This document shows, one piece after another, positions 6,646 to 32,629 of a stretch of DNA of 64,000 bases. Numbering within the stretch: position 1 is the first letter of the stretch; each line of letters opens with the position of its first letter. Source of the stretch: Leucoraja erinacea (lineage: Eukaryota); NCBI RefSeq assembly GCF_028641065.1, contig NC_073387.1, positions 15,810,001 to 15,874,000 of the forward strand, written 5' to 3'. Position numbers and translations under genes: made by a program. A model generated the notes under the pieces. It ran no database searches and was not told the DNA's origin. It saw only the letters and a list, made by a program, of their open reading frames with translations.

Positions 6646-6770
6646 AATGTGACCTTGCATGAATTCCACAACAAAACACTTCAGGTTTTACACAATAATG
6701 AGCTGGTCTGGCACCCCAGCGATTCCCCCGTGGGAATGGTGAATGTCTCCTGACCCTCTCACTAACCCTC

Positions 6771-8971: not shown

Positions 8972-9270
8972 GAGCACGGTGGTGCAGTGGCAGAGTTGCT
9001 GCCTTACAGTGCCAGAGACCCAGGTTAGATCCTGACTACTGCTGCTGTCTGTACCTAATTTGTACATTCTCCACTTGACCGCTTGGGTTTTCTCTGAGAT
9101 ATTTGGTTTCCTTCCACACTCCAAAAATGTACAGATGTGTAGGATAATTGGCTTGGTATAAATGTGAATTGCCTCTAGAGTGTGTATATAAGTGTGCGCG
9201 GTTTGCTGGTTTGTTGGGTCTCAGTGTGCCGAGTGGCCTCTTTCTGTGCTGTATCTCTAAACTAAACTCA
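8972..9270 (+). mobile_element. HE1/V-SINE-type SINE, full length
   Basis: tRNA-like head (GGTGGTGCAGTGG...GGTTAGATCC), V-SINE core, and CR1-like tail GCTGTATCTCTAAACTAAACT. Confidence 0.8.
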
Positions 9271-9719
9271 CCTGCATTTCGTGGATCTACAGATATCAAT
9301 AGGTGAATTGTTGCCATTGTCCTGACCATTATTTATCCACAAATCAACAGTTATTAATCTGAATATTAGCACATTGTGAGAACATTCTCTGTGGAGATTG
9401 GTTGCTGAATTTCCATCATTCTTACCGGGGCTACTCCTGCCAGTGCCCATCATTTTGTCAGTGGACTTTCCACCAAGATGGTTGTGAGACTGGGGTTTAT
9501 CTTTTGATGTGAAGTGTAGAGAGGGAGGATATCATAGTGCCAGACATTACTGTACAGTTATTGTAAACTTTCTATATCAACTAAGGGATTGTCACCACAA
9601 TAAAAACAAATGTGATCACTTTTCCTTTATTTTGAATGTAGGGTGGCAGAGGTCTCATAGATCTTGGCAATTACAAAAGGACACACATATATACCAACAG
9701 ACAGAGGTTAGGGTCCCTT

Positions 9720-10130
9720 GATAGAACAGCTGGTGATGCGTAAATTATCTCTCAAGGAAGGGTGGGATCATGTTATCCTTGAAGGGGATAATCCATGAGT
9801 GAGGCAAATCATGGATGCAGGAGCCATGTTTAAATCACCACAGGGAACTGAAGTGGGTCAGTGGCTGATGAAAAGCAGAGGCACTGTGTTGAAGAAGAAA
9901 TGGCAAAGTGATGGAAACAGAGAGCTGAGCTACAGTAAAGAGCTTGGAGCTCTGGAGGCTGTGGGGATCCACTCGGAGAGGAATTTAATGAGAAATGAAA
10001 TTCAGAGAAAGGACTTGATTGCCTTGAGGGAATGAGGGAACCAACATGGAGTTAGCTGCATCATCTGGCTGAGGGAGAGTGTGGGAGGGAAAGGAAGAGC
10101 CGAGGAAGGGGAGAATGCAGGGAACTGGAT
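9720..10130 (-). mobile_element. Old L2-like LINE remnant
   Basis: Decayed purine-rich stretch typical of antisense L2; duplicated at ~61770-62175. Confidence 0.4.
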
Positions 10131-11167
10131 CATCAGTCTGAGACAACTTGAAATTAGGAAATTCAATACTTGTGCCTTTGGGTTGCTGGCTACTCTAGTA
10201 TAGCCAGGCGTTTAGAAGAATACCACCTTATATTCCACCACGGAAAGTTTACAACCATTGGTATGTACATGGAATATTCTAATTTGAGGAAACATACACC
10301 TTCTGTGTTGCACTCTCCCCCTCTTTCTGAACCACCTCTAATACTCACATTTTTGTTTCCTCTCCCATCTCCCCTCTCCAGCACCCTTTCTCCTCTCCCT
10401 CTGTCTCCCGGCTCCATCTCCTCTCCACCCACACACTTCACCACTGGATCCCCTCCCCCATCCGGTTCCATCTGCCCTTTATCTCTCCCTTAATGGTTCC
10501 CATCAGCACCATCATGACATCAGATTCCAGCACTTGTTGGCCCCGTCTTCTGTCAAGTACAGAAATGGTAATAGATTCTTAAACCTTGTTGTTGGGAATT
10601 ATGTCTGATCTGATCTTGACCAAGGAACAAACTCATTCATTAAATGTTCTAAAGTGATTTCCCTCACACCGTTGTCACCGTGAATCATGGATTTGTTCTA
10701 CAAGGTCTGTATCATTCAATTGAAGAAGAAACCTAACAATTCTCTAATATTACACTTTAATCATTTTGCTGTAACATGGAGCGTGCATTTCAGCACCACA
10801 AACAGCGGCTGGCTGCCGGTAAACACCGGCACTGTAGACTGAGCTCTGGCCACAGTCACATCAGCCACGACTTTGTTCAAATACCCAGAATTGGATCAAC
10901 TCATCTGGACCTCATCAGCTTCCTATTTATAAGTTAGTTCCAGCCAGAGAGGAGAGAGAAGGAGGAAGCAGGGCAGGAAGAAAGGGAGGGAAAGTGGAAA
11001 ACCCTCTATTAACTGCGCAACTTTTCACAGGCTAGAAAGAAGACTGAGACCGCCAGCACCTCCTGGTGAGGCCAGAGTGAGCTGCTGGGACAAATCCAAG
11101 ATAGCCGGTGTCCTCCCTGATGTCGAATGACTTTGGCCCCGTGTGGACCTGGACCTTCTTGTGACTT

Positions 11168-15982: not shown

Positions 15983-16066
15983 TCAAGATTTCAAGGTCTG
16001 CAATGCGACAGCTTCGTTTGAATTGTTTGTGACATTTCCTGTAACTTCCCGTGGATTTCTGCAGCT
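15983..16066 (-). CDS. Terminal cytoplasmic exon SCRNPREVTGNVTNNSNEAVALQTLKS*
   Basis: T-rich acceptor tttgttgttcttgtttgatacag; open in phase 0 for 27 codons. Confidence 0.6.
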   Translation of the reverse strand, partial: SCRNPREVTGNVTNNSNEAVALQTLKS

Positions 16067-19000
16067 CTGTATCAAACAAGAACAACAAATATTCTTTAAA
16101 ATAAAGAGTTTATCCTGCAATGATAAACAATAGACTGGAAGTGATAGGTAAGAGGCAGTTTGGAGACAAAGTTGGAAATATTTACATGGCTATTTCATGG
16201 TAAAAAGAATACTCATTAGGAGTACTAGGAGTTCTGGTAGCCCCATTAAAGGAAGGATATGAAGGCTTTGGAGAAGATGCAGAAGAGGTTTACCAGAATG
16301 CTGCCTGGATTTGATTGGAAAGTAAAATCAACAGTTACGAAGGGTTGTGGTAGAAACAGCTCTGAGAGTGTCATTTAAGAGGTTTTTAGATAGGCATATT
16401 AATATGCAGGGAATGGAGAGATTTGGATCACGAGTGGGCAAAATAAATTAGTTTAAATTAGCATCATGATCAGCTTAGACATTATGGGCCAAAAGGGCTT
16501 ATTTCTGTGCTGCACTGTTCTATGCAAAACACTAAAATACAGATTGTCACCACTCTAATATGTTCTGTGAACATTCATTTTCTCAACGTCAGAGACAACC
16601 TGTCATTGGTTTCTGATATATTGAAAAGCTCATGAAATTCTCACCCTGTTCATTCTCCATGAGTAGGAAATTAGTCCAAGTGCAACGGCCAGTTTAATCA
16701 ACAAATATCGCAGAACTGTGATGATCCTAATGTCTTGAAGTGCTCTCACTGTGAAGGACAAAGTTGATATTTTCATTTTTTTTCTCAACCGTGTTTCATA
16801 ATTAAATACTACTGTCTGTGATGTGACATCAAAAACATTCTGAATTAGATACTGGGACACAGTGAGAAATAATATGTCAAGAGTGAGAAATATTTGTGCC
16901 ACGTCTAAGTCCAGGGTACCTTTTATTTCGCGTCCATAACATCTGAGTACTAATGTTTGATATTTTCTGCCTCATTACTTTTGGAACATTGTGAATATTT
17001 TTTGGGAGAATGAGATGTGTCTGAACATACACAAAATAGGTTGATCCATTATCTAAACTGATGTCAACCAGGTGTCCACCAAGGCATCTACGCAAGAGGG
17101 ACTGGATAGAGATTCACGGCTGAGACTCTGCAGGATCTGAATTCTCACTCAGGCCGTATTGCCTGAGGACCTCATACAATCAGAGAGTCATAGAGTGATG
17201 CAGCGTGGAAACAAACCTTTTGGCCCAACTTACAAGTCCCAGTTAGCCTAATCCCACCTCCCCAAGCTTGGTCCATGTCCCTACAAACCTGTCCTATCCA
17301 TTACCCAGTGAGGTGTGAGAGGCACGACTCATTCACTTGGGTTTATTTAAATAAATGTTCATTTTACAAAGGTGCAATCTTGCTTTAATTTTACCCTCAT
17401 GTATGGGTTTGAAAGATCTGTGTTTCCATAACATGTATATACAAAATGCTTTATATTTTATTTTGATTTATTCACTGATATAATATTATGCCATCAATTG
17501 ACAGGCTCCAGTGAAATTACACTTTGATCTGTAGCATTGGGTATAGATGGAAATATGGGAGATTTAAAATCAGAAATTGTTTTATTTAGGATTATACAGG
17601 GAAAAATATAATTATTACTCCAGTAGTAGTTGAAGGTTGTTATTGGTCCTTGTGAAATCTGAGGTTAGAATTTTGTCAAGGTACAACTATAGTACCGGAT
17701 CTGAGATTAGTCAGATGTGAAGCCTATTGGAGAAATGATCACTGAAATCATCAAACCTGGAATTGTCCACATTGGAAAAGATTAGATTCACGTAGAGATT
17801 GTACCCAAGAGAACAATAAACATAAATCTAATCACCTTACAACTTAAATTATTGTGTATACTTACCCTTTAAAAATAGTTAATTCTGTGATTATTCTAAA
17901 TTGTTCAATTGACATACAACATATGCATGTAGTTATGGTTAAGAACTGATTTATCTTTAACATTTTAAAGATAATTAATGTGCACGTAATATACATGTGT
18001 GATATTTTTTACACATTGTTGTAGCAGCCACTGCTGTCAGTTGACTGTAGCAATTTTCATTGAAGTCTGTTGTTCAGCACCTCTCTCTTTATTCCTTGCT
18101 TGAGTGAACAGCAATAGAAGAAAGACCATAGACACTATACGAATGATTAGGGGGTGACCTCTAGTAAAAATATCAATCTGTGGCAAGGATTTTCCATGGA
18201 GGATCAATGCTGAGTTATTGAAAGTGAGGCAATTATGCGAAAGAGAGAGCAGCAACTGAGCGAAACATGTTGTGATGTGACACAAGCTGAGGAACTTACC
18301 GTTCACCTTAAGATAGATTGAATTTCTCAGCTTGAGGCTGTTTCGCTGAAACAATCCACATGTCCATTTCCTTCTCACTGTCTCAGCTTTTGGAATAATC
18401 AGCTGCAAAGACCACACTTTCTCTCTTGACTTGTTCAAAAATATCTCTCCCATACTTTTGCCATCACTGTTGATCCAAGAGAGTCTCATTGATTCAGCAA
18501 CACCAGACACAGAGCAGGTCAGTGTTACATTGTTTTCCTCTGTTAATGCATCAGATGGTTCGACTGTGGCTATGAAACAAGACCATCATTAAAATTTTGA
18601 ACAGCAGCCAGGGTTTTTACTCTATTGATTTCTTTATCAATCGCCTCATAACCCTATGACTGGCCAAACGGACAATTTGTATTGTTTAGAAACAGTTTTA
18701 TTGTATGCTGCAGTGAACAGCAATAGAAAAATAACCACAGACACGACACAAATGATGAAGGGGTGATCTCCAGTAAAAAGTTCAATCTGTGGGAAGGGTT
18801 TTCCATGGAAGGTCAATACTGAGTCATTGAAGCTGAATGGCAACACCTAATAATATGATTGTTTACATTTATATTGTGGAACTTGATTTTCCATGATCAA
18901 AGAAACCAACTAAAAAACACTGCACAATAAGCAACTGCTGCCCGCAGCACTGCCTCAGTCCACTGTGCTGGAGCCAAACCCTTCCACACACTGACACATT

Positions 19001-22000
19001 CCAATGGCAGGATGCCATCGAGGATCTCCTGTGAATGACACATGATACAGAGGATCCGGAATATACCCTCATTTGACCTGCATTGAGGTTTATTTATTTC
19101 TTCGATGGACCCATTTCCAGTGGGTGAATCAATTCCACATCATCGACCTTAAATATGAAAAGGAAAATGCTGTAATGCCATGTGCTGCCTGATATACTGT
19201 TTCATGATTCATTTTGTGTTGAGTAAAACACAAATAAATATCTGTAATTCTGGAATAAAACCTACTCTTTAAAAGAAGGGAATATTTGGAGAAATTTGCA
19301 CAGAAATTGCAGCTCGCATTCAATGTCGGAGTTCTACTACAATGAATGAAAAATACTAGCAGCATTCAGTCTCCTACCTGTAACAGTGATTAGGTCAATG
19401 GTCACATATATATTTGATCCCGTGGAACATGTGTAAACTCCAGCATCTTCAAATTGTATGGGGACAATCCTCACATGGAAATTCTTGCCATTCACATTTC
19501 CCTCTGCGGTTTCCAGTCGATTCCCAAAGTAGCTCCTGTCAACATGGATCGGCTCAGACCTGTGAGAAGAAGTTATTTCCTTCTCTTGATTCTGGAAATG
19601 TTGTGATCTCCAAGTCCATTTAGTTTCACTGAGATCAGGAGAAGCTTCACAAATCAGGTCGAGTTCACTGTGATCTGTAACTGAGCGATAAACTGTGTAC
19701 GTCTTGTTATGTAAACCTGCAAGAGAGGGACAGGGAACAAAGAATTGGATTTCCACAGATGCCGAGATACAATGTTGTGAGTTTCCACAGAGCCAAACCC
19801 CCAGCTCTGGGATGTCAGCTGGGATGGCCGCACTGGGACAGGGAAGTCGGCTAGGAGCTGGAATACGTCACCTGCTGGTCCAGGTGCCCTTTGTTCAAAT
19901 GCCGAGCTGTAAAGTCCATCTTCCCCACACACACACCCAGCAAAGTGATGCTGGTGGACTGGAGATAAATTCTGCCACAATAGCTCAACACTCAATTATC
20001 ACTCATGTAGCAGCTCCATTTCACTGGGACTGTCAAGTGTTATTGGGCAGTTAATTATTTAGAGTATTTTATTGACCAGTGGAACTCAACATGCCTCAGC
20101 CAATCTTGCACCTGTAGTTTAGTTAGTTCATATTTCTCAGCTCCATTCCAGATAGAATACCACTTGCTTCTCTCCATTGATTGATGTTATCCCCTTTGAC
20201 TCATGCAGGTGAACTGAAATGAATCCCTTGGTTCTCCTGTGTGGCTCCATCAATCTTAGTGCCACCATTTTATATTTACAACATGTCCCAGGGTAAAGGC
20301 TATGTCCACATAGTGCAGTGTGGAAGCCCATGGGTGGAGTCAGTGCTCACTGTACAATATGTGGAACAGTTTGATATCAGGAACTATTAATACCTGCTGC
20401 AAGGCAGCTTTGGACTCACCCTGATCCACTTCAACATTGGTGTCTCCAGTGAGAACAATGGAGCCATTTTCCAGCACTTCCCATGTGTACAGATTGGGAC
20501 TTCCTGCTCCAACGTGTTGGACCATCAGATATACGGTGTTAATCAGATGGATCTGATCAGTGTTGTTCCTCGTGTTCTGCTGAGATGGGCCTCTTGGTTT
20601 CCAGTGAAGACTGACGGTATCTGGAAGTCTGGAGATGGTACAGCTGAGGGTGATGTCACTGCCCATTACTGGCCTCGGTGAGTCTGCCTCAACTGTGGAA
20701 TCAGACACATGACATGTGGATCAGTTCCCCACCAATTTTATGAATAACTGTGGGCAGAATTGTCTCTTTCCTGCAAACAGTTGGCCATACTCAGTGATGT
20801 CATCAACACTTCCTGGTAGTGACCATCTGTCCCTCTCGGCCCCCTCGCCTCCCACATCAACACTTACAGGTAGGGATTTATTTAGTACAGGAGAAACATA
20901 GAACTGCAAATGCTGGTTAATATATAAAAGGACAAAAAGTGCAGGAGTAATTCAGCGGGTCATGCAGCAACTCTAGAGAACATAGAAAGGCGATGTTTCA
21001 GGTCGAGACCCTTCTTCAGACTGATTATTTTTCTTCGATGTCTTTTACTGAGGGGTGATCATATTGGGGTGAATCATGAGAGGCATATCGTTAGTAAATG
21101 CACATGGCCTTTTTCCCAGTGTTGGGGAATCAAAAACTAGATAGTACATGTTTAAGTTGAGAGGGGACAGATGTGATATATCCCATAATGTGAGGTGCAA
21201 TTTTTTGACAAAGAGGGTGGTACTTGAACAAACTTTATGGAAAGATCGAGCAGAGGAAATGGTTGATGCAGGTGCAACAACAATTAAAAGACATTTAAAC
21301 ATGCACATGGAAAAAAGGTTGAAGGGATAAGGGCCAAATGATGGCAAATTGGATGGTTAGATGTTCAGTTGGTCCATTTGGATGAATTGGGCTAAAGGAC
21401 CTGTTTCAGTTGTGTGTGACACTATAACTTACCTTTGATCCCAAATAGTTCCCACTGTCTCAGGATTTTCCCACCGGGCTCTGCTCGAGTCCAGGTGAAT
21501 AGTCCTGCAAGTTCAAAGATGGGCTTCCTGATCCTCAGATCAAGGGTACCCCAGTCCACACGCATGCTCTGGGAAATGCCTGGTATTTGATTGTACTCAT
21601 CACTCCATTGTACGGCCCACTGCTGATCTTCTCTGTGAAAAGTGGCCAATCGCTTTGTGGTTTGTTGCCCTGAGTGTGGCCTCCATTCCCAGTCAATGGG
21701 GCCATTTCCAGGACTGTCTGGTCCTTTCATTACAAAGTTGCCTTCCTGGTGGAAAAAGTAAATAGAATCTCCACATCCTGTAGGAAAAGAGAAGAATCTT
21801 TAATAAGTTTTACATTATAATTCATCATCCTGGAAGAGCATAGAAATAGGTCCTCTTTATCAACCCACCAACGCTGACCAGTGGGTATCCTTCCACGCAG
21901 ACACTAGAAACTGCAGATTATGGAATGTTGATCAAACGCAAAGTGCTGGAGAAAATCAATGGGTTAGGCAGCATCTGTGGAGGGAATGGATTGATGATGT

Positions 22001-25000
22001 TTTGTATCTGGACACTTTTTCAGACTGATGGTCTAGTTGAGAAAAAACTGGGGAAAGGGAAGTAGGCATGAGACAAAGCATGGCAAGTGATAGGTGGATA
22101 CAGGTGGGGAATGGTGATTAGATGGATGGAGATAATGACAAAAGCAAGCGGTGAAATGGAGACCGTAGTTTGTCAGATCCGTAAAAGAGGGAGGGATATG
22201 GGTGGAAGTGGAGCAAGAACATATAAGCAGAATTGTGCAATTGGAAGGGGTGGGAAATGAGTGGAAAGAGGAAGGGAAGGGAATAGTGTAGCTGGGTGGT
22301 GGGATAAATGCATGCACAATGAAGTGGGGGGGGGAGAAAATGGGGTTTGGGATGTTTTATTTGAAATTTGAGAATGAATTGGTCATAATAGACTACTCAC
22401 AAACCAGAAGAACATATTCCACTTTCAAATTTCAGGACATCAAAACTCAATCATGACTAAGTATGAAGAGCAAACCCTGAGTCACTTACCACGGGGCTCC
22501 TGATAGTACGGGACAAAAAGCCGGGGCAGGTCTTGATGAAACAAACCACATCTCCAGTTCCCTCTGCCTCTCTCATCTTTCTGAATAACCAGATTCTGTG
22601 ATTTCTCTTCCACAGTCAGTGACATTTCTCCAACACTTTTGCCATCGCCATTGATCCAAACCAGTCTCATTGACTCAGTAACGTGAGACACAGAGCAGGT
22701 CAGTGTAACGGTGTCTCCCTCAGTCACTGCATCAGACGTTTCTGCTGTGACTGTGGAAACAAGCAGGTTGTTTAGATTTTAAACATTGAGTTCATCAGTA
22801 AAAACACTGGTAGCATAATATCTCCTACCTTTCACGGTGATTAGATCAATTGTCAGATATGGATATGTTCCTATTGAACATGTGTAAGGTCCGGCATCTT
22901 GAAACAAAATCGGGACAATCCTCAAACTGAAATCCTTGCCATTGAAGTGTTTCACTGAGGTCATCAGTCGATTCCGGAAGTAGGTCCGGTTGACATTGAT
23001 GGGCTGAGAGCCTACGGCAGTTGCTATTACTTTTTGTTGTTGTTGAAGGCGACGAGATGTCCAGGTCCACCGAGCAGTGGAATAGATATAACTAGGAGAA
23101 CAAACCAGGTGAAGTTCACTGTGATCTGTGTTGGAGCGGTAAAGCGTGCATCTCTCCTTATATAAAACTGTATCAGTGAGACAAAAGATAACTCCTTTCA
23201 GTATTCCAGTTACCGTGCCATAGATAGATTCTTATCCGCGTTTCAAATGTAACATATTTCTTGAATGCCGCACCAAAACACATCAGATCTTCATAAAATA
23301 AAATGTTGTGTTCAGCAGTAAGTTGTAGTTAAGTTTGAATATTCCACTACATTTCAACATTAGGTTCGCCCCCACTCCCGACTGTCCGGGAATCTCCCGG
23401 GATGGAATGAAACCTCCCGGAGAATCCTGAGAGCGTCCCGGGATGTGAATCTCTTTGTCTGTCTGCAGGAGGTAGTGCAGGTTCAGGCTGCGGACAGAAG
23501 CAGCCCAGAGGATGCCTGATCCGGACAGGTTGGCAGTTCAAGTGGGTCAGGTCTTCCCGTCCTACCCTGTTCCTGGGTCCTGCTCTCAGCTCAATGCTGA
23601 TCTGAAGCCAGAGTATGCAGCAGCTGGAATCACTTCAAACAGCAGCAGGACTCGGAGAGAAGGGTCAGTGAGGTGAGAGGGGACGGATTTTATTCAATGC
23701 TGATGTGTGTACCGGGACCCCAAGTGTGAGTGTGAGCAGCAAGTGCTGGTGGTTGTCATGGTGACTACACTTTCTATCTGACACTTTGACGTGAGTCCTG
23801 TATCAGTATCTCAGTCTCAGATACTGGAGCATTGATGGCAAGTTAAACTGACAAAATACTTTACTAAACAATTGTTACAGAAATACATCATCACTCCTGT
23901 GTTGTGTGTCTGTCACACAGAGACAAGCAGGCAGCTGCTCCACAGAGAGACTTTCTGGAAACTTCTCCCTGATCATTCAGCATTTTATACAGGAGAGCAG
24001 TTGGTCACTGTCCACAGTTCTTCACAGGGCGCACGCATAATATTACAAGATGCACCGTGATACAAGTGTCTACTTGATATGTAATGGGAGGTGTTTACAC
24101 TTACACGTGTTTACAGTAAAATCTCCATTACTGGTGAGAACGATGTTTCCGTTTTCCTTCACTTCACACACATACAACTTCCCATCCTCCACTGTAACAT
24201 GTCGGATCATCAGATAGACCGTGTTATTCAGGCGGATCTGATCAGTGTTGCTCCTGTTCTGCTGGGATGAGTCCATTGGTCTCCAGTGAAGACTGACTGT
24301 ATCTGAGAGTCTGGAGATGGTGCAGCTGAGTGTGACGTCACCACCCAGCAGAGGGCGCTGTGGACTTGCCTCAACTGTGAAAAACAGATGAATGAGATTC
24401 AGAGTGAGTAGTGGTGTGGACAGTCCAATGACTGGGCTCAAGGCTGACAGCCTGGCTGAAAGTCAGGACAACTTCTCCCCCAGTGCGTTCAGCCCCCTGA
24501 CACGCATGGCTGGTCACAGTGACGCAGCTGTTCACCGTGGGGCAGCTGGTGGAACCGGCAACATTCAGGCTTTGTTGCATTTACACATGCTCTGTTTCAA
24601 ATATTCACAAACTGTTGAAAATGCATCTATTTCCACCCCTCTTATGTTTATCTGATTGTTCTCAAGAGGTGAACACCTTGATGGCAGAGCCCAAGTCCCA
24701 CAGATGATGGACTTTCATCGGCCTGGTCACAGGGTAACATTAAGCAGCAGTGTCACCCCGGAGCCACTGCACGGAGACATTGGTTTCATACCACCTTGCC
24801 GCGATCACCTTAGCGTCTGCCGGCGAGAAGACCATGGCATTCGCTGCGGGGTGGATTCATTGATTTGCTGTTCCCAGTGAAGTCAAACTAATTTCACCAC
24901 TGCTGATCATTTTAGAATCAATGAACAAAATCATTTCCCCAGTTGTTTTACTGGGAGATTCTCTTTTCACCGGGTGGATGATGTCTCACGTCCCACCATC

Positions 25001-26305
25001 TCTCATCATTATAGGTGACAATATAAATTAAACATTATTGATCCTTATCGCACCCACTCACCTTTGATCCCAAATATTTCATATTGTTTCAGGATTTGTT
25101 TTCTCGGTTCTGTTTGAGCCAAAGTGAAAAATCCTGCCAGTTTAAATGTGGGATTATAAATTGTCAGATCAAGTGTACCGTGATTTACATACATCTCCGG
25201 GTACAAGTCCACTTTACTCCAATAGTTCCCTTTTCTTCTAAAAGTCGCCAAATTCTCGACTTCCTTCCCTGAGTGTGGTTTCCATTCCCAGACAACAACA
25301 GAGTCTTTCTCGGGATTGTCCGGTCCGTTTAACACAATGTCGGCTCCGTTATCCAAGAAATACATTCGATGTCTGTATTCTGTTGCAAATACGAACAATG
25401 AAGAATTAACATTTAAAACACATTTCCCCCACTCCATATCTGTAATTATTAATTTTGAACAATTCAATTCCAGACAGTTGTGATCTTTCTTGGAAACCCA
25501 GCGAGGAAGACTCAGTTTGTGAAGAGATGTCTGTCTGTAGAACTCTGAAGTCTGAAGAAGGGTTTCGGCCGGAAACGCTGCCTGTTTCCTTCGCTCCATA
25601 GATGCTGTTGCACCCGCTGAGTTTCTCCAGCATTTTTGTGTACCATCTGTCTGGAATAACCTGGCCTGATCCAGGGATATTTCATCACATGAGAGGAGTG
25701 AGTGGGAGGGGATCGGAGGTGGGGATAGGGATTTGTGGTGGGGCAGTGGAGGAGCTCCCCCCGGTTTTGAAGGAACTTTGCGGGAGCGTGGTGAAGTGTG
25801 TTGCGCGTGGTTCTCGGGCTGCGACTGGATCGATAAGTTGAGGGCAGTTCCACCAGCCTGCACTGTGGTGGGAAGGTGTTGGGGCAGGATGATGTGAACA
25901 ACTGTGTCAAAGGCTGCAGAGGCTGAGCGGTATGAGTAGGGAGAGTTTAACTCCGTAACAAGCTCACAGGAGGCCATTTCTGACTTTGATAAGGACCGTG
26001 TCGGTGCAGGAGGAGAGAGAGTTGAGGGAGGAGGGAAGGGGGGGGGGCTGAGAAATGGAGCTCCAGTAAGGAATGGCGTGGATTTGTGAGGCATCAGCAT
26101 ATTCAGGGACGTGGAGAATAAAGCGACATTGACAATGGGGTGCCGGTTTACACGAACAATGATAACGTAATGCAACGTTATTGTGACCGGTGAAGAGAAA
26201 GCACTTACTCTGAGTTGAAACAGGTCGAAGCAGGAAAACAAAGAAACCGAACATCAAACCAATTGGCAAACTGCCGCAGAGAAACCTCGGCCTCATTTTG
26301 TGCAT
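15983..26305 (-). CDS. Eight-Ig-domain type I membrane receptor, 899 aa, 11 coding exons: 26305-26209, 25379-25062, 24374-24105, 23167-22829, 22750-22490, 21777-21433, 20692-20420, 19716-19378, 18569-18300, 16748-16645, 16066-15983
   Basis: All introns are GT-AG. The leader ends in phase 1, the eight Ig exons are phase 1-1 and open, the TM exon is phase 1-0, and the tail exon ends in TGA. Lengths 97+318+270+339+261+345+273+339+270+104+84 = 2700 nt. Confidence 0.85.
16130..16530 (+). mobile_element. CR1 3' remnant in the TM-tail intron
   Basis: Decayed ALEKMQKRFTRMLPG motif and CR1 3' tail. Confidence 0.65.
16645..16748 (-). CDS. Transmembrane exon VRALQDIRIITVLRYLLIKLAVALGLISYSWRMNR
   Basis: Acceptor tttgtccttcacag and donor AGG|gtgaga; phase 1-0 as typical of TM exons; hydrophobic stretch with embedded R and K. 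Confidence 0.8.
18300..18569 (-). CDS. Ig D8, C2 domain with WxC (paralog of D4)
   Basis: ATVEPSDALTEENNVTLTCSVSG..LSWINSDG..RRKWTCGL; donor G|gtaagt. Confidence 0.92.
19378..19716 (-). CDS. Ig D7, V domain (paralog of D3)
   Basis: ..DHSELDLIC..TKWTW..NFHVRIVPIQFEDAGVYTC..; same 339-nt length as D3. Confidence 0.92.
20420..20692 (-). CDS. Ig D6, C2-like domain (paralog of D2; F-strand Cys replaced by Trp)
   Basis: VEADSPRPVMGSDITLSCTISRLPDTVSLHW..PNLYTWEV. Confidence 0.9.
21050..21425 (+). mobile_element. CR1 3' remnant in intron D5-D6, preceded by a Penelope-derived terminus (~20895-21025)
   Basis: CR1 3' UTR-like sequence; CTGAAGAAGGGTCTCGACCTGAAAC on the minus strand. Confidence 0.65.
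21433..21777 (-). CDS. Ig D5, V-like domain lacking the canonical disulfide (paralog of D1)
   Basis: GCGDSIYFFHQEGNFVMKGPD..DWEWRPHSG..LDLRIRKPIFELAGLFTW..ELFGIK. Confidence 0.9.
21900..22380 (-). mobile_element. Decayed Penelope-like 3' terminal region
   Basis: Similar to 4731-5040. Confidence 0.55.
22490..22750 (-). CDS. Ig D4, C2 domain with WxC F-strand
   Basis: VTEGDTVTLTCSVS..LVWINGDG..RGNWRCGL; preceded by a 78-nt intron. Confidence 0.92.
22829..23167 (-). CDS. Ig D3, V domain
   Basis: ..DHSELHLVC..ARWTW..NRL..DFSLRIVPILFQDAGPYTC..; DxGxYxC motif. Confidence 0.92.
24105..24374 (-). CDS. Ig D2, C2-like domain
   Basis: VEASPQRPLLGGDVTLSCTISRLSDTVSLHW..EDGKLYVCEV..; canonical C-W-C. 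Confidence 0.92.
25062..25379 (-). CDS. Ig D1, cysteine-free V-like domain
   Basis: KYRHRMYFLDNGADIVLNGPD..VVWEWKPHSG..LDLTIYNPTFKLAGFFTL..YEIFGIK; acceptor gcaacag, donor G|gtgagt. Confidence 0.9.
25662..26130 (-). mobile_element. L2-like LINE remnant in intron 1 (copy at 40725-41175)
   Basis: Frameshifted TDTVLIKVRNGLL and SAAFDTVVHIIL RT motifs. Confidence 0.6.
26209..26305 (-). CDS. Exon 1: signal peptide MHKMRPRFLCGSLPIGLMFGFFVFLLRPVSTQ
   Basis: Basic N-region and hydrophobic core; donor CAGA|GTAAGT; conserved in four paralogous copies. Confidence 0.9.
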
Positions 26306-26673
26306 TCTCTGTTTGGAAATAACGTGCAGTTTTAGACTTTGATCAGTAAATTGCTAGTTGCCAAATGTTTTATTGAGTACAGCCAGTTTGAAACTCCTGA
26401 CCCAGGAGCACTTTAGAATTGGTCGCACACAATTACACGGGGAAAATACATTCGCTTGGTGGACGCTGCCGCTGGAATATTGTCACTTCTGTAATCTGGG
26501 ATTTCTCGTCCATATTAAACCGCTATCGATTGGCATTGTCCGAAATCACTCATCTGAACTCCGCCTTTTTAATTTTTGACACAATTACTTCCCACTACTC
26601 GGTAAAATAGTTTCAACTAAATTGGACCTCGCTATTGAGTCAATGAACAGAGAAGGCAACAGAATGGCAAGGG

Positions 26674-26760
26674 ACACAAAATTGCTGGAGAAACTCAGCG
26701 GGTGCAGCAGCATCTATGAGATGCTGCTGCACCCGCTGAGTTTCTCCAGCAATTTTGTGT
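26674..26760. repeat. Perfect inverted repeat (42-bp arms, 3-nt loop) from Penelope termini
   Basis: 26674-26715 is the exact reverse complement of 26719-26760. Confidence 0.95.
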
Positions 26761-28224
26761 ACCTTCGATCTTCCAGCATCTGCAGTTCCTTCTTGAACAG
26801 AATGTCAAGGGACATTGAATATTCTCAGACGGTCCCAAGACGTTGTCGGAGGTACGGGAAAAAATATTCAATTTAGATTGACTAGGAAACCAGTAGGAAA
26901 ATGGCATATGCTGGTCATTTAGCTGTGAGAAACACCCTCCATTCAGTTACTGGGGAACTAAAGGAGACAAAGCGAAATTAATAAAGTTTGTATGCCCTAG
27001 TAAAATCTAAAGTAGAACAAACTGATTGAACGAGTGATAGATCACAGTTTACAGGATATCCAACATTGTTCAGTTTCTGGATACCACTCTTTTACATGAA
27101 GTGAGACTGCAGTGAGGTCGCCTACTTTGTGAGAAGAGACTGATGGTGAACGAGTACAGAGACTGCGGTAAAGCTCCAAGCACGGCGACACACTGAGATT
27201 CACAGTCTCACTCGATGATTTACACAGTTTCTTTGGAAGGGCAAACACCCTTCAGCTATTTATCACCAGACTACTCCCAAGTAAACCAAATCATACTTAA
27301 GAATGTTTGTTCGTCGTGTGATCTTGAACGGAACAGGGGTACTAATAATTTGCAGAGGAAAAGCTGCAGTAAGTTGCTAGTTCGCAATTGTTGTATTGAG
27401 TACAGCCACTTTGAAAACTCTGGGCCCGGACCATTTGAGAATTAACCGCACACAATTACACGGGGAAGGACCATTCCTCTGTGGAATCTGCCACTGGAAT
27501 ATTGTCACTGCTGTAATCTGGGATTTCCACAACCACATTCAATCGGTTCGCTTTGACTGAAACGACTCATCTGTACGCAGACATTTTAATTTTTGACCCA
27601 CTTCCTTCTTCTCGGTAGAGTGGTTTTAACTCATTTGTACCTCACTAGTCAGTCATTTAATTGAGCGGGCAACAGAACAACGAGGACGTTGAACATCCTC
27701 AAACAGTCCCAGAGCCCGAAGATTTCCGGATAAATGGGAAAAATAAAATCCACATTGGCATGGATACATTATATTGACCCGGTAACAAATAAGAAAGCAC
27801 AAATGGGTAAAATGGCAGGTGCTGGTAATTTTGCTTCATTACGTTTCTAGGGGGAAACAATGGAGACAAAAATGCATTGATAAAGAATGGGTGATGTTTC
27901 GGATCTAAGAGGTCAGCGTATGAAACGTCACCCATTCTTTCTCTCCAGAGATGCTGCCTGTCCCGCTGAGTTACTCCAGCATTTTGTGTCTCTATTCATT
28001 ATTAAATAAGTTTCTATGTCCTTGTAAAATCTAAAGCAGAACAGACTGTAACAGTCTAATAAATGGTTGTAGGAGTAGAATATCACACATTAGAAATGAC
28101 GTTAGATCCCATTTAAACCACTCCTTTACCTGAAGTGAAACTGTAGTAAAGTAGCCTACCTTGTGGGAAGAGACTGGTGAACGAGGCCAGAGACTGGGCA
28201 GCAAAGCTCCAAGCACGGCGACAC

Positions 28225-28350
28225 ACTGAATTCCCCAGTCTCACTTTGCGCAATAACTAACGCTGTGTCTTATGAAAGTACAGGACCTTCCTCTTCCTCT
28301 CCTTCTCAGGGTTCAGACATCACTTCTGTTGAAAGTGTTTGCGTCACTGT
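28225..28350 (-). promoter_or_regulatory. Putative promoter: C/EBP palindrome, tandem PU.1/ETS boxes, kB-like site
   Basis: TTGCGCAA at 28246-28253; AGAGGAAGAGGAAG at 28287-28300 (minus); GGGGAATTCA. The C/EBP and PU-box motifs recur at ~43459-43515. Lies just 5' of a donor-bearing exon-like block. Confidence 0.4.
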
Positions 28351-28554
28351 AAAATCCACCTTGTTTTAAACCTAATTTCGGCAAAGTAAAATGGGAATTT
28401 ACTGAGCTCAAACATGAGCCATGAGGCATGGAACCTCATTTTTCTAAAGGTTATTGGAGGTTAACAAATGTCAACGGCAATGGGAAATGAGATAATCTGT
28501 TGTTTTGTAATGATGATTATATGTCAATCTTCTTGCATCTGTAGCGATGTTCTG

Positions 28555-28860
28555 ATTGAGTTTGGTTTTGAGATACAACATGGAAACAGGCCCTTCAACC
28601 CTCCGTCCACCGACCATTGATCTCCCGTTCAGGCTAGTTCTGTTATCTCACTTTCCGGTCCACTCCCTACGCACTCCAGGCAATTTATGGAGGTCAAGTA
28701 ACCTGCAACCCGCTCATTTGTGGGATGTGGTACTAGGAAACCAGAGCACCTGAAGGAAATCCACGTGGCCACAGGGATCGTGCTATCTCCACCCAGAGAG
28801 CACCAGAGGTCAGGATTGAACCCTAGTCTCAGGCAGCTCTAACATCTGTGCCACTGTGAT
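28555..28860 (-). mobile_element. HE1/V-SINE-type SINE
   Basis: Homologous to the other SINE copies. Confidence 0.78.
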
Positions 28861-29248
28861 TTGGATGGTTTGGCAATTTCAAACTATGAGTTTTGGGTTG
28901 GGGAGAACACAAACGAGCAGATATGATAATTGCTGTATTATTCAGTTATTCCAATGTTGAGTGTAATTATCACCTGAGTTTCACACAAGGTAAACCCGCC
29001 AGTCACCATTCTCATGATCATTCAATTTCTTCTGCAACTTTCAGTGTTCTCCAAACCAAACCGTACAGTTTGCACCAAGACCGTCATAACCTCTAAGAAT
29101 AAATCGTGTCCCTTCCAGTTCAATTCAGTTTAATTCAGTGTCAAGTTTCTGACGTAAAGAGAAAAGCTTTTGCTGAATGCTAACCAGCCTGGGCAAAGGC
29201 AAGTGTCATTAATGCCATTCACAACTGAAGTTAGAATTGTTTCTTGTA

Positions 29249-31012
29249 GGATCCGCTGGGGGCGACATGTTAGAGTAGTTACACGTTTCCACGCCGTAAA
29301 GATGCCAGGCAGAGGAAAGAAAGTGGAGCAATAGACGGAAGACCCGATGACCAGCATCGGCATGGCCACGCTAGCAGCCATGTTAACAGAGCACAAGGTA
29401 TCGCTACTGGCAGAATTCAACGCAGCGTTCACCAAACTGGAAACGAAGCTGGACAATATCCAGACCACAATTTTAGATCACCAACACCGTCTTTCATCAT
29501 TAGAGTCTTTTGCAGATACCACCAGCCAAGACATACGAGCTATAGCGATAATGCTAACTACGGTGACCAAAGAGAACGCCAAGCTAAAGTCTAAGCTTAT
29601 CGGCCTGGAAGGCAGGAGCCGCTGAAATAACATAAGGATAGTCGACCGACGCCGAAAAAGCTTTCGACAGGGTCGAATGGAGGTACTTATATGAGGCGAT
29701 GGACAGGTTTGGCCTCGGTAACAGTTTTATTCTTTGGGTCAGTCTATTATACTCGTCCCCGGTGGCCTCAGTACAAACAAACGGCACACTGTCGCCCCAC
29801 TTCCCCCTTCAGAGAGGTATCAGACAGGGTTTCCCGTTATCACCACTCCTGTTTGCTGTCGCGATAGACCCTTGGCAGTCTGGTTACGCTCAGAGAAAGG
29901 CTTTAAAGGTATTACACGGTTCGACGCAACTCATAAAGTCTCATTGTATGCGGATGACCTGCTGCTGTACATGTCAAACCCAGTCGGCTCTCTCCCTGTG
30001 ATAACGAATATTTTAGAACGGTTTGGTGCGTATTCTGGTTATAAACTTAACTACCAAAAGAGTGAGCTATTACTGATTAGCTCATTGGCTAAGCAGCTCC
30101 CTCGCTCTTTAACCTCATTCAAATGGGCAGAGGACGGGTTTCGCTACCTCGGCGTCTTTATCACAACACCTTTATCTGATATGCTCCGCACAAACTTTCT
30201 AACTCTGGTTGAGAAAGCTGAAAGAGATTTTGACCGCTGGTTAGTTTTACCGCTATCCCTCGTGGGCCAGATAAATCTGGTCAAGATGGTCGTCCTACCC
30301 AAATTCCTGTATCTTTTCCAGCACGTCCCTATACTTATCACTAAATCTTTTTTTGATAAATTAGAAAGGACAATATCTAAATTTTTATGGGGTAGCAAAC
30401 CGGCTAGAATCCGAAAGGCGATACTGCAGCCTCCTAAGAGTGACGGCGGTTTGGCACTTCCTGACTTTAGGCGATACTATTGGGCAGCTAACTTGCAAAA
30501 ACTCCTGTATTGGATGAATGATGATTGCGACCACCTACCGACCTGGGTACACATGGAAAAGGCGAGTTCACATCTCCCGTTGCGGTCTGTCCTATGCTCC
30601 CAACTCCCCCTTCCTATAACATCTGTGGGTGCAGAAGAAATGCATCTCTGTTTTGTATAACTTGTTAGGGTCGGTTATATTGAAACCTCATATCTCATTA
30701 AAAGCTGCGTGGGAGGGTGAGCTGAATACGAAACTAACAGACCAGCAATGGGACTGCCTTGGATTTGATCCATTCTTCCTCCATATGTGCCCGTCATGGC
30801 CTAATCCAATGCAAAGTCCTTCACAAAGTCCACTACACAAATGCAAGATTATCTAGAATTTACCCCGCTGTTAGGGACACCTGCAACAGATGTAATCAAT
30901 CTCCTGCCAACCATAGCCATATGTTTTGGTCTTGCCCTAAGCTAGCAGCCTTTTGGAGGAGTGCTTTCGACTTGATAAGCAGAGCCTATGGCCAGACTAT
31001 TCCTCCTAAATC
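29249..31012 (+). mobile_element. Internally deleted L1 (ORF1 N-half fused to RT and C-terminal Zn region) with ~16-bp TSD
   Basis: ORF1 coiled coil ..LEGRSR*NNIRIV joined to DAEKAFDRVEW..RQG.PLSPLLF..YADD; CNRC..HMFWSC; flanked by AGAATTGTTTCTT(G/A)TA; empty sites at ~970 and ~44477. Confidence 0.9.
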
Positions 31013-32629
31013 AGAATTGTTTCTTATAATACATGTTCAAGCGAATGACTGTGTGATGTTTGAAATGTCTATGATAATGTCACAGACAGAATCGCATGTT
31101 TTGTAATAAAGTGATTGGTCAACATTCTTGCCTTTTCATGCTGTAGCTGGTCCGTAGTGCAATCCTATATTCAATTGCATCAGATCATGGTGGAGGTTGG
31201 ACTTAGGAGGTCACAAATGGGCTGCATATGATAATCAAGCTATTACAATTTTACAAAGTAAGTCTAATATTGAGAGCAATTTTCTCCTGAGTTCTCAATT
31301 TCACTCAAGGTGGAAACGTCAGCAAACATTTTCACAATCATAAGTTTTTCCCTATGTCATTTAGTGTTCTCCAAGCCTAACCTCACAGAGTTACACCAAG
31401 ATCTTCACAGCATGGAGATATAGACACGAGAGATACATTGTGTTCCAGGTGTACACTGGCCCTATCCCCAAACTCTATCCCCATTACATTGATGACTGCG
31501 TCAGTGCTAGAAAATATATCCACAATATGCAAGCACAATCCATACCCAGAATTGTTTGGCTAAGTTAGCGGAGTGGCACAAGTTGACCCAGTTAGTCACC
31601 ATCATAACTTGGACATACATTGCTGGTCCTTCGTTATTTGGTGGGCCTACTCCTATCATTTACATTATTTACTAAACACCTCAGTGGTGAAATAAGGATG
31701 TTCACATCCTCATGGGTTAAAAATGGAAGCCTGAGCACTGAGGCCCACATCCAAAAACATTGATTTATAAGCAAAAATTCTGGAGGGAATAACAAAGTGG
31801 AGCTCATCATCAGCTCAGGAGTTAGTGTTGTCCTCATCGTGACAAGACACCTAATCAGGCTCCTTCCTTAATCCGGGTTAACTGCTCATTTCCCCCATAT
31901 TGTGTGAATTCTGCAGAAAAATAAAATTCATTTTTATTGCGGCTTCACCCTCTGCTTTGATATTTTTCCCCAGCACCTGAATATTTCTCTTTGTAATTCA
32001 TCTCATCTCCCCCTCCAGCCCACACTGTCCGTCACTCTCACATTCTAAACGCTGGGATCATCCCCTGTCTTATCTGGTGCAAATGTCTCCGTTGGGGCAC
32101 TTGCTGAGTTTGAAGTGTAAACAGGGCCTAACACAGATCATTCCTCTTTTACGCTGATGTTATCTTCAGAAATAACTTCTCTGTTTACCCTTTACATTTA
32201 AATGTAATTCCGTATAATTCTATTTATGTAATTGTTAAAAATACTTTGAGAACAGAACATGGGGCACGTGTGCTGAGGATATCATTTATTATAAGGATAG
32301 TAACTAACTATTGCATTGTTGATGTCTTGACCAAAAAGCGTAATTTTTAAAAATATTTTTGCTATTTCCCACTGATTAAAAAATAAAATAGTGGTGTTTC
32401 TCTCGACTAAATTACATCTCTTTATACTTTTCCACATATTAAATTTCCTGTTTGATACCTGCTGGATGAAAATATTTCAATTTCCAACCTGGTTTGGTGT
32501 TTCCGGGTTCCAAAACCGTGTTTGGATATTTAAAAATAATTTACGCGAGAAGACAATGTCTTTTTGAATTTATGTAAGCGAAATCATGGCAAACAAACCT
32601 ACTGGAGATTATTGTGATGTACCATTTTG

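What the first reader, a model, noticed from the sequence alone, without database searches (positions are those of the whole stretch)
15983..26305. Apparently intact eight-Ig-domain receptor built from a doubled CD4-like V-C2-V-C2 cassette
Seen: 11 splice-compatible, stop-free exons give an 899-aa protein, with D1-D4 repeated as D5-D8 (pairs D1/D5, D2/D6, D3/D7, D4/D8). D4 and D8 carry an F-strand WxC (NWRC, KWTC) instead of YxC. Known: V-C2-V-C2 order with WxC C2 domains marks CD4/LAG-3; teleost G6F-like has a comparable four-Ig layout and DICP D2 domains also show WxC. Inference: this belongs to a possibly uncharacterised, expanding chondrichthyan leukocyte receptor family. It lacks the CD4 CxC Lck motif and the LAG-3 tail motifs, so it is neither ortholog.
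Basis: partly seen in the sequence, partly recalled or inferred. Interest (0 to 1): 0.9.

Follow-up and report, generated by a model that had tools for sequence, protein, structure and literature searches.

The report
Skate activating CD4/LAG-3-like eight-Ig receptor
This little-skate gene is real and intact: it encodes an eight-domain, CD4/LAG-3-like surface receptor that looks like the "on-switch" partner of neighbouring "off-switch" genes, in a large, unnamed and unstudied receptor family of sharks, rays and primitive bony fishes.

Summary
Eleven minus-strand exons (26305-15983) with canonical splice sites encode 899 aa. Exon by exon they equal RefSeq XP_055498694.1, "uncharacterized protein LOC129701495 isoform X1" of Leucoraja erinacea. 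RNA reads cross the D5-D6 and D6-D7 junctions exactly; D4-D5 and D8-TM reads were not listed at about 1-8x depth.

The family reading holds but needs widening.
- The four-domain cassette occurs once, twice, four times (catshark) or five or more times (eel). It is found in chimaera, sharks, rays, bichir, sturgeon, paddlefish, bowfin and basal teleosts, always unnamed.
- The doubling predates the shark-ray split.
- A family profile hits LAG-3 first among all PDB sequences. Structure models match CD4 and LAG-3 best, and only these match as rigid two-domain V-C2 units.
- WxC is present only in D4/D8, and the CD4 and LAG-3 tail motifs are absent, so this is kin, not an ortholog.

The new point is that this member is the activating type. 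It has a conserved lysine-bearing transmembrane exon and a short tyrosine-free tail, while its paralogs carry ITIM tails. A sawshark pair of the two types is 97% identical outside the cell.

This scan had already reported an inhibitory paralog about 29 kb away (s1-141729).

The parts
26209..26305 (-). Exon 1: start codon and signal peptide (32 full codons, phase-1 donor AGA|GTAAGT)
   Evidence: equals P0122 residues 1-32
25062..25379 (-). Exon 2: D1, a V-like domain without cysteines (family type T1)
   Evidence: no Pfam hit; family-specific profile finds only 41 clusters in 1.84 billion proteins; P0122 34-138
24105..24374 (-). Exon 3: D2, constant-type Ig domain with YVCEV F strand (type T2)
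   Evidence: Pfam Ig_3/ig/C1-set; P0122 140-228
22829..23167 (-). Exon 4: D3, V-set domain with the canonical disulfide (type T3)
   Evidence: Pfam V-set 6e-6; P0122 230-341
22490..22750 (-). Exon 5: D4, C2-type domain with NWRC (WxC) F strand (type T4)
   Evidence: aligns to the WxC of LAG-3 D2 and D4 at profile level; P0122 343-428
21433..21777 (-). Exon 6: D5, second cysteine-less V-like domain
   Evidence: 45% identical to D1; P0122 430-543; spliced reads join its donor 21433 to 20692
20420..20692 (-). Exon 7: D6, constant-type domain with F-strand Cys replaced by Trp (YTWEV), as in nearly all eight-domain relatives
   Evidence: P0122 545-634; spliced reads on both sides
19378..19716 (-). 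Exon 8: D7, V-set domain
   Evidence: Pfam V-set 1.5e-7; P0122 636-747; spliced reads join 20420 to 19716
18300..18569 (-). Exon 9: D8, C2-type domain with KWTC (WxC)
   Evidence: P0122 749-837
16645..16748 (-). Exon 10: stalk and transmembrane segment with Arg and Lys in the membrane span (the family's GYLLVK-type motif, here RYLLIK)
   Evidence: conserved in thorny skate (87%), sawshark (54%) and sawfish (57%) proteins; predicted helix 839-860
15983..16066 (-). Exon 11: short cytoplasmic tail without tyrosine, ending in the conserved EAVALQTLKS, plus the stop codon

Best explanation
The locus is a functional little-skate gene, RefSeq LOC129701495. It encodes a type I membrane glycoprotein with eight Ig domains: two copies of a rod-like V-C2-V-C2 cassette of the CD4/LAG-3 kind.

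It belongs to a clustered multigene family whose members come in two signalling types. Most have an uncharged membrane span and a long tail with several ITIM-like tyrosine motifs (IHYGSI, VIYAQI), so they are inhibitory. This gene is the other type. Its membrane span carries a conserved lysine, plus an arginine specific to little skate, and its tail is short with no tyrosine.

By analogy with KIR2DS, LILRA, SIRP-beta and PILR-beta, I infer that the lysine recruits an acidic ITAM adaptor of the DAP12/FcR-gamma/CD3-zeta kind. Ligand binding by the variable outer V domains (D1, D3) would then activate the leukocyte, while ITIM-bearing paralogs with related ectodomains inhibit it.

Shown here: the gene structure, identity to the RefSeq model, partial splicing evidence, the family and its two tail types, and fold kinship to CD4/LAG-3. 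Inferred: adaptor coupling, the activating output, the cell type and the ligand.
For: - Gene model: canonical phase-1 exons with no stops, exactly equal to XP_055498694.1.
- Splicing: reads cross 21433>20692 (6 reads in run X3, 1 in X4) and 20420>19716 (7 in X3, 1 in X7).
- Ortholog: the thorny-skate protein P0121 is 95% identical.
- Fold: all eight domains are modelled as beta sandwiches (mean pLDDT 73.6), with continuous strands across all four V-to-C2 borders and a membrane helix at 839-860.
- Two tail types are seen. The K-type membrane motif [G/A/R]Y[L/F]x[V/I]K occurs in 14 fetched proteins from skates, sawfish, stingray, sawshark, horn shark, sturgeon and bowfin. Fifty-four others carry two or more ITIM-like motifs.
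- Sawshark P0009 (K-type) and P0105 (ITIM-type) share 421 of 434 ectodomain residues and diverge exactly after D4.
- Skate paralogs LOC129701489, 492 and 493 carry ITIM tails. Pseudogene copies lie in the window and an inhibitory paralog lies about 29 kb away.
- The outer V domains are the most variable. Mean identity for D1 to D8 is 51, 70, 56, 67, 73, 79, 63 and 66%.
- CD4/LAG-3 kinship: LAG-3 is the top PDB sequence hit for the family profile (E 3e-14), with WxC aligned. Foldseek ranks LAG-3 first and second and CD4 third and fourth. VIA-align gives CD4 Z 17.8, rat CD4 D3D4 Z 16.0 (rmsd 2.5 A over 169 of 177 residues) and LAG-3 D3D4 Z 13.2 at 22% identity. Other hits near Z 14 cover one domain only.
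Against: - No adaptor, ligand or expressing cell type was examined.
- Read depth was only about 1-8x in one of four runs, tissue unknown. No D4-D5 or D8-to-16748 junction was listed, and the latter lies partly outside the laid stretch.
- Reads from a close paralog could in principle supply the junction reads. However, variant reads with no other mismatch argue for an allele of this gene (table 3).
- The short tail carries a motif conserved from sawshark to skate (TGNxT...EAxALQTLxS). It may therefore signal or sort in its own right rather than be a stub.
- Little skate has Arg where thorny skate has Gly five residues before the Lys. Two charges in one span could impair membrane insertion.
- RefSeq also predicts a 749-aa isoform that ends after D7 and would be secreted.
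- The CD4-specific Pfam families did not match.
Confidence: 0.65

Rival explanations
1. It is mainly a secreted or decoy molecule. The dominant product would be the 749-aa isoform that stops after D7, or another form without a membrane anchor, soaking up the ligand of the inhibitory paralogs rather than signalling.
For: RefSeq isoform X2 (P0092, 749 aa) ends two residues after D7. In run X3 depth is higher over D5-D7 (about 4-8x) than over D8 (about 1.4x).
Against: The membrane and tail exons are conserved at 87-96% with thorny skate and recognisably with sharks, which argues that they are used. D8 is intact with canonical splice sites. Depth is too low to compare exons reliably.
Confidence: 0.1
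2. The family is a branch of the CD2/SLAM or CEACAM group, which has disulfide-less N-terminal V domains followed by C2 domains and paired ITIM and activating members. On this view the CD4/LAG-3 resemblance is only shared V-C2 geometry.
For: D1 and D5 lack both cysteines, as CD2/SLAM/CEACAM N domains do (general knowledge). NCBI names one homolog 'CEACAM5-like'. A CEA model is the second-best PDB sequence hit (E 1e-11). NTB-A aligns with D1-D2 at Z 13.5 over 101 residues. Two members weakly hit Pfam Receptor_2B4 (E 0.0025). A 2014 paper took a little-skate EST for a CEA homolog (PMC4079198); the EST itself was not checked here.
Against: LAG-3 outranks CEA in the profile search, with WxC aligned. 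Rigid two-domain superpositions of about 160-175 residues at rmsd 2.5-3.6 A are obtained only with CD4 and LAG-3, for both D1-D2 and D3-D4. The V-C2-V-C2 alternation with a disulfide-bearing second V is not the CEACAM N-A-B pattern.
Confidence: 0.15
3. It is an expressed pseudogene or a decaying copy. The extra arginine in the membrane span and the tail shortened relative to thorny skate would be early signs of loss, as in the two broken copies in the same window.
For: Two frameshifted paralog copies flank the gene. Skate has Arg where thorny skate has Gly, and its tail is 12 residues shorter. D8 is unusually divergent, at 52-55% to other members against a family mean of 66%. Expression is low.
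Against: A 2700-nt reading frame across 11 exons has no stop, and all 20 splice sites are canonical. It is 95% identical to the thorny-skate ortholog. Correctly spliced reads exist and all eight domains are predicted to fold.
Confidence: 0.07

Closest known systems
LAG-3 (CD223)
   Same: V-C2-V-C2 ectodomain. It is the best PDB sequence match of the family profile (E 3e-14): the D3-D4 module aligns to both LAG-3 D1-D2 and D3-D4, including the F-strand WxC. Foldseek ranks it first and second. LAG-3 D3D4 superposes at Z 13.2, rmsd 3.4 A, 22% identity. The paralogs, like LAG-3, are inhibitory by motif.
   Different: Eight domains rather than four. D1 and D5 lack the disulfide and the LAG-3 extra loop. 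There is no WxC in D2 or D6. There is no (F/Y)xxL(D/E) tail motif. This member has a charged membrane span and a short tail, and the family is multigene and clustered. Sharks have their own LAG-3 (PMC10768021).
CD4
   Same: Four-domain CD4 is the top structural match (Z 17.8). Rat CD4 D3D4 superposes on D3-D4 at rmsd 2.5 A over 169 of 177 residues, and CD4 D1D2 superposes on D1-D2 at Z 13.1 over 172 residues. Continuous beta strands run from the V domain into the C2 domain, the feature described for CD4/LAG-3 in PMC10768021. One V domain per cassette lacks a disulfide; I recall this for mammalian CD4 D3 from memory and did not check it.
   Different: No Cx(C/H) LCK motif. The profile E-value to CD4 is only 5e-7, within the general Ig background. 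The CD4-specific Pfam families are not hit. The cassette is doubled, and the family has paired activating and inhibitory members.
Paired activating/inhibitory Ig receptors (KIR2DL/2DS, LILRB/LILRA, SIRP-alpha/beta, PILR-alpha/beta; in fish NITR, LITR, DICP)
   Same: The logic is the same: clustered paralogs with related or near-identical ectodomains. One type has ITIM tails, the other a basic membrane residue and a short tail.
   Different: The ectodomain type and domain number are unrelated, and the membrane motif is its own. No adaptor association has been shown. The activating membrane exon seems as old as jawed fishes (bowfin, sturgeon) rather than recently derived.
Teleost G6F-like (G6fL), the thrombocyte collagen receptor
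   Same: Four extracellular Ig-like domains and one membrane span (PMC3528668). Sturgeon relatives of the family (P0028) have YxN-type tail tyrosines.
   Different: This gene has no YxN and no ITAM. No named G6F-like protein appeared in any search. A sequence comparison could not be run because no G6fL sequence was available by reference.

Membership tests
CD4/LAG-3 family | Four-domain V-C2-V-C2 ectodomain | tested here: met
   Pfam V-set on D3 and D7, and Ig_3/ig/C-type on D2, D4, D6 and D8. AlphaFold models show alternating larger V and shorter C domains. CD4 and LAG-3 are the top fold matches. The cassette is present twice.
CD4/LAG-3 family | WxC motif in the F strand of the second C2 domain (D4) | tested here: met
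   NWRC in D4 and KWTC in D8. W and C are invariant or nearly so in the family alignments and align to LAG-3 WGC and WQC.
CD4/LAG-3 family | WxC motif also in the first C2 domain (D2) (PMC10768021) | tested here: not met
   D2 reads LYVCEV and D6 reads LYTWEV. The family consensus is YxCEV and YTWEV.
CD4/LAG-3 family | Continuous beta strand from the V-domain G strand into the C2 A strand (rod-like V+C2 unit) | tested here: met
   Predicted only. The strands are 127-142, 330-344, 533-546 and 736-751 in the P0122 model and 132-147 and 336-350 in P0009. Rigid two-domain superposition on CD4 and LAG-3 supports it.
CD4/LAG-3 family | CD4 tail Cx(C/H) LCK motif or LAG-3 tail (F/Y)xxL(D/E) motif | tested here: not met
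   The tail is RMNRSCRNPREVTGNVTNNSNEAVALQTLKS. It contains neither motif.
CD4/LAG-3 family | CD4-specific Pfam families (named from memory as C2-set PF05790, CD4-extracel PF09191, Tcell_CD4_C PF12104) | tested here: not met
   None of the three appears among the hits shown at E up to 1: the first member's full table and the 25 families that most of the 20 four-domain members match, out of 49. For P0122 none appears at E up to 0.001.
CD4/LAG-3 family | Conserved synteny with the CD4/LAG-3 region; MHC class II binding | not testable with these tools
Binding needs experiments.
Paired activating/inhibitory Ig receptor system | Basic residue within the membrane span plus a short tail without tyrosine motifs | tested here: met
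   The span is IITVLRYLLIKLAVALGLISYSW and the tail has no Tyr. The Lys is conserved in 14 fetched proteins of several orders.
Paired activating/inhibitory Ig receptor system | Paralogs with related ectodomains that carry ITIMs, clustered in the genome | tested here: met
   Skate LOC129701489, 492 and 493 have IHYGSI and VIYAQI tails on the same 60.4-Mb record. The ectodomain is 65% identical to the ITIM-tailed LOC129701492, and 77% to LOC129701496, whose model carries no ITIM tail. The sawshark pair is 97% identical.
Paired activating/inhibitory Ig receptor system | Physical and functional coupling to an ITAM adaptor | not testable with these tools
   No skate adaptor sequence was available by reference.
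Teleost G6F-like | Cytoplasmic YxN plus ITAM (PMC3528668) | tested here: not met
   The tail of this gene has no tyrosine.
Teleost G6F-like | Sequence kinship of the four Ig domains | not testable with these tools
   No G6fL sequence could be obtained by reference. No named G6F-like protein appeared among the hits.
CD2/SLAM/CEACAM group | Disulfide-less N-terminal V domain followed by C2 domain(s) | tested here: inconclusive
   D1 and D5 lack cysteines. NTB-A scores Z 13.5 over one domain, and there are weak Receptor_2B4 hits in 2 of 20 members. However, the D1-D2 pair superposes as a unit on CD4 D1D2, and LAG-3 outranks CEA.

The most novel reading that the evidence does not exclude
The family would be a third, unnamed branch of the CD4/LAG-3 stock that became a germline-encoded paired receptor system. 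Inhibitory ITIM members and lysine-coupled activating members, such as this gene, would survey MHC or MHC-like ligands on other cells. On this view it is the cartilaginous-fish and basal-fish counterpart of KIR, LILR and Ly49, present in the jawed-vertebrate ancestor and later lost in tetrapods and most teleosts.
Probability: 0.15. Interest if true: 0.85.

Novelty: new variant of a known kind. Interest (0 to 1): 0.55.

Why it matters
As far as I know (from memory, not searched here), no KIR-, LILR- or Ly49-like natural-killer receptor system has been identified in cartilaginous fishes. CD4 and LAG-3 are so far treated as a two-member family with opposing tails (PMC10768021).

This family has dozens of genes. 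It shares the CD4/LAG-3 fold and occurs from chimaera to bowfin. It splits into ITIM-bearing members and lysine-bearing members, sometimes with 97% identical ectodomains. That gives a concrete candidate for such a receptor system, and a possible older context for how CD4 and LAG-3 came to have opposite functions.

This gene is a clean, intact activating member in a model species. The adaptor, ligand and cell-type questions can therefore be tested directly with it.

The gene is already in RefSeq as an unnamed prediction, and this scan had already reported its inhibitory neighbour. The news is therefore the classification and the pairing, not the existence of the gene.

Tried and rejected
- My first gene model used a hydrophobic exon at 18209-18081, just after D8, as the membrane exon. 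I rejected it because RefSeq and all K-type homologs use 16748-16645.
- I looked for remnants of ITIM-tail exons in the window with tblastn, using five inhibitory tails. None was found.
- I asked whether the two extra membrane-like exons derive from the inhibitory membrane exon. There is only a non-significant likeness (E 0.9) to a third membrane type in manta proteins.
- ESM Atlas features returned generic Ig clusters only.
- A search with the membrane-plus-tail region of P0122 gave no hit. A search with sturgeon P0028 gave only unnamed proteins of sturgeon, paddlefish and bichir.
- Literature searches for the LOC identifiers, for 'obscurin-like' in nurse shark and for paired receptors in cartilaginous fish found no description of the family.
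- The sigma-70 promoter/terminator scan and the AATAAA scan were uninformative for a vertebrate gene.
I repeated it by reference.
- I built no joined exon sequence and sent none to any tool. Full-length work used the public protein id P0122.
- Complex prediction was not used, because no adaptor sequence was available.

Full report
**What is in the sequence**

The stretch 15983-26305 holds a minus-strand gene.
- Stop-free segments in the expected order carry a signal peptide, eight Ig-type exons and two 3' exons.
- I checked each junction on its own and did not build a joined sequence. Every exon is bounded by AG and GT. All Ig exons are phase 1, no junction codon is a stop and no exon has an internal stop.
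- Exon lengths sum to 2700 nt, which is 899 codons plus a stop.
- Pfam calls D3 and D7 V-set. It calls D2, D4, D6 and D8 generic or constant-type Ig. It finds nothing in D1 and D5, which have no cysteines.
- D1/D5, D2/D6, D3/D7 and D4/D8 are 45, 61, 54 and 51% identical.
- D4 has NWRC and D8 has KWTC. D2 has YVC and D6 has YTW.

**It is an annotated but unnamed gene**

A profile of D1 and D5 was searched against 1.84 billion representative proteins. It found only 41 clusters. From these and a follow-up search I reached two Leucoraja erinacea proteins:
- XP_055498694.1, "uncharacterized protein LOC129701495 isoform X1", 899 aa (P0122);
- isoform X2, 749 aa (P0092).

The inner codons of the nine 5' exons and the peptides of the last two exons occur in P0122 in order, letter for letter. 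I had at first taken a nearer hydrophobic exon (18209-18081) for the membrane exon. Homologs show that the conserved one is 16748-16645.

**Transcription**

No indexed RNA run held the stretch. I laid raw reads of four same-species RNA runs on 18001-24000.
- Run X3 covers the exons at about 1-8x.
- Joints at 21433>20692 (D5-D6) have 6 reads in X3 and 1 in X4.
- Joints at 20420>19716 (D6-D7) have 7 reads in X3 and 1 in X7.
- Both joints sit exactly at the predicted sites, with GT..AG on the minus strand.
- The D4-D5 joint was not among those listed. The D8-to-16748 joint lies partly outside the laid stretch.
- Variant reads at 20590 and 21486 have no other mismatch. This fits another individual's allele rather than a paralog.

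**The family**

All relatives are "uncharacterized", "hypothetical" or automatically mis-named ("obscurin-like", "CEACAM5-like", "VCAM1-like"). They come from:
- a chimaera;
- many sharks;
- many rays and skates;
- bichir, sturgeons, paddlefish and bowfin;
- eel, conger and a mormyrid.

With profiles of the four domain types, the T1-T2-T3-T4 cassette is seen once, twice, three times, four times or at least five times:
- once in about 450-600-aa proteins;
- twice in 32 of the proteins fetched;
- three times in a sevengill shark protein;
- four times in a catshark protein of 1710 aa;
- five or more times in an eel protein of 2139 aa.

In a maximum-likelihood tree of 59 cassettes, the membrane-proximal cassettes of sharks and rays form one clade (SH-aLRT 99). 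The distal cassettes form another (SH-aLRT 89). The doubling therefore predates the shark-ray split and is not special to this gene. The Cys-to-Trp change in D6 is nearly invariant among eight-domain members, so it is a family trait and not damage.

**Kinship with CD4 and LAG-3**

- A profile of 20 four-domain members was searched against all PDB sequences. LAG-3 came first (E 3e-14). The D3-D4 module aligns to LAG-3 D1-D2 and to D3-D4, including WxC. CEA, CD22 and, further down, CD4 (E 5e-7) follow.
- An AlphaFold model of the sawshark four-domain member P0009 has pLDDT 81 and pTM 0.74. It shows continuous strands across both V-to-C2 borders.
- The model of P0122 itself has pLDDT 73.6. It shows continuous strands at all four borders, eight folded domains and a membrane helix.
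- Foldseek ranks LAG-3 first and second and CD4 third and fourth.
- VIA-align gives four-domain CD4 Z 17.8. Rat CD4 D3D4 scores Z 16.0 at rmsd 2.5 A over 169 of 177 residues. CD4 D1D2 scores about Z 13-14 over about 170 residues, against either half of the cassette. LAG-3 D3D4 scores Z 13.2 at 22% identity. Unrelated hits of similar Z cover only one domain.

Against membership as an ortholog:
- WxC is absent from D2 and D6, although the hallmark is WxC in both C2 domains (PMC10768021).
- The CD4 and LAG-3 tail motifs are absent.
- The CD4-specific Pfam families do not match.
- Sharks have their own CD4 and LAG-3 (PMC10768021).

I therefore file the family as CD4/LAG-3-like kin and not as either gene.

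**The new point: this member is of the activating type**

The regions after the last Ig domain fall into two classes. Most proteins have an uncharged membrane span and a long tail with HLYSN, EYMSV, IHYGSI and VIYAQI motifs, the last two being classical ITIMs. A minority, including this gene, have a stalk and membrane exon with the motif (G/A/R)Y(L/F)x(V/I)K. Their tail is short and has no tyrosine.

This exon is 87% identical in thorny skate, 54% in sawshark and 57% in sawfish. The same lysine motif occurs in sturgeon and bowfin relatives. Among 127 fetched proteins, 14 are of the lysine type and 54 carry two or more ITIM-like motifs.

Sawshark P0009 (lysine type) and P0105 (ITIM type) share 421 of 434 ectodomain residues and part exactly after D4. 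That is the signature of paired receptors.

In the skate, the ITIM-tailed paralogs LOC129701489, 492 and 493 lie on the same chromosome record. An earlier report of this scan describes an inhibitory eight-domain paralog about 29 kb from this window.

The distal V domains D1 and D3 are the least conserved, at 51 and 56% mean identity. D5 and D6 are the most conserved, at 73 and 79%. This fits ligand binding at the tip and a stalk role for the proximal cassette.

Adaptor coupling through the lysine, an activating output, the ligand and the cell type are inferences from the KIR, LILR, SIRP and PILR precedents. They are not results.

**Points that do not fit neatly**

- Little skate has Arg where thorny skate has Gly, five residues before the lysine, and its tail is 12 residues shorter.
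- The "stub" tail carries a motif conserved from sawshark to skate (TGNxT...EAxALQTLxS).
- D8 of this gene is unusually divergent.
- Two extra stop-free, splice-compatible, membrane-like exons lie between D7 and D8 and just after D8. They are in no model.

**Surroundings**

- Two plus-strand copies of a related gene (2945-8600 and 53896-60630) sit within 94-97% identical duplicated blocks. They have a frameshifted T1 exon and only partial T2 and T3 exons, so they are pseudogenes.
- A roughly 6-kb duplicate of the promoter region and signal exon lies at 40721-45294. Its signal exon is identical at the protein level.
- Next to that duplicate lies an LTR retroelement. The rest of 27-53 kb holds reverse-transcriptase ORFs. 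I only describe these.

**Limits**

- The G6F-like, DICP and true skate CD4/LAG-3 comparisons could not be run, because no such sequences were available by reference.
Full-length analyses used the public protein id.

**Verdict**

The gene is a new variant of known kinds: a paired Ig receptor with a CD4/LAG-3-type ectodomain. It is already annotated but uncharacterised, and its family was already met by this scan.

Noticed in passing
window 18621-18818 and 18081-18209, minus strand: Two stop-free, phase-1 splice-compatible exons encode hydrophobic membrane-like segments that are 49% identical to each other. One has an Arg, and both are preceded by a His-Pro. One lies between D7 and D8 and the other about 90 nt after D8. 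They are in no RefSeq isoform and resemble neither the K-type nor the ITIM-type membrane exon. There is only a non-significant likeness (E 0.9) to a third, Arg-bearing membrane type in manta proteins P0012, P0074 and P0077. They may be relics or alternative exons.
   Followed up: partly
window 41256-41354 (minus strand), within 40721-45294: A second copy of the signal-peptide exon, 100% identical at the protein level. It lies in a roughly 6-kb duplicate (78-93% DNA identity) of the gene's upstream region and first intron start (25659-31829). No Ig exons follow it. It could be an orphan 5' end or an alternative first exon and promoter.
   Followed up: partly
window 2945-8600 and 53896-60630, plus strand: Two copies of a related gene lie inside duplicated blocks (1850-10554 and 52933-62603, 94-97% identical). 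The T1 exon is split over three frames, and only parts of T2 and T3 are left. They were pseudogenised before the block was duplicated.
   Followed up: partly
window 32622-40533, minus strand: An LTR retroelement with 96% identical terminal repeats (32622-33522 and 39630-40533). Its ORFs match PNMA-type gag, reverse transcriptase, RNase H and a weak integrase. It is described only.
   Followed up: no
window 29734-30660 (+), 46825-48042 (+), 48581-50464 (-): Further reverse-transcriptase ORFs of non-LTR type by Pfam RVT_1 fill the space between the receptor gene copies.
   Followed up: no
window 20989-21026 and 21965-22102: Short intronic stretches have read piles of 30-78x in all four RNA runs. 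Most reads run on into unlike sequence and show odd joints, so these are repeats transcribed elsewhere in the genome, not part of this gene's message.
   Followed up: no
window 16645-16748 and 15983-16066, minus strand: Little skate has Arg where the thorny-skate ortholog has Gly, five residues before the membrane Lys. This gives an R-x4-K spacing like that of the T-cell receptor alpha chain (the resemblance is recalled from memory and untested). The tail stops 12 residues earlier than in thorny skate. The tail motif TGNxT...EAxALQTLxS is conserved from sawshark to skate, and its function is unknown.
   Followed up: partly
P0122 residues about 430 and 561; window D4-D5 junction and D6: D6 keeps its B-strand Cys, although the F-strand partner is Trp in nearly all eight-domain members. 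This gene also has a Cys at the D4-D5 junction where the family consensus has Ser. These may be free or unconventional cysteines.
   Followed up: no
P0001 (catshark, 1710 aa), P0007 (American eel, 2139 aa), P0061 (sevengill shark, 1404 aa): The cassette number varies widely: four near-identical cassettes in a catshark protein, three in a sevengill shark protein and at least five in an eel protein. Some may be fused gene models.
   Followed up: no
P0095 (nurse shark AGQ17915.1, 'obscurin-like protein', 916 aa): The only family member deposited by a laboratory rather than predicted by a pipeline is mis-named 'obscurin-like'. I found no paper describing it.
   Followed up: partly
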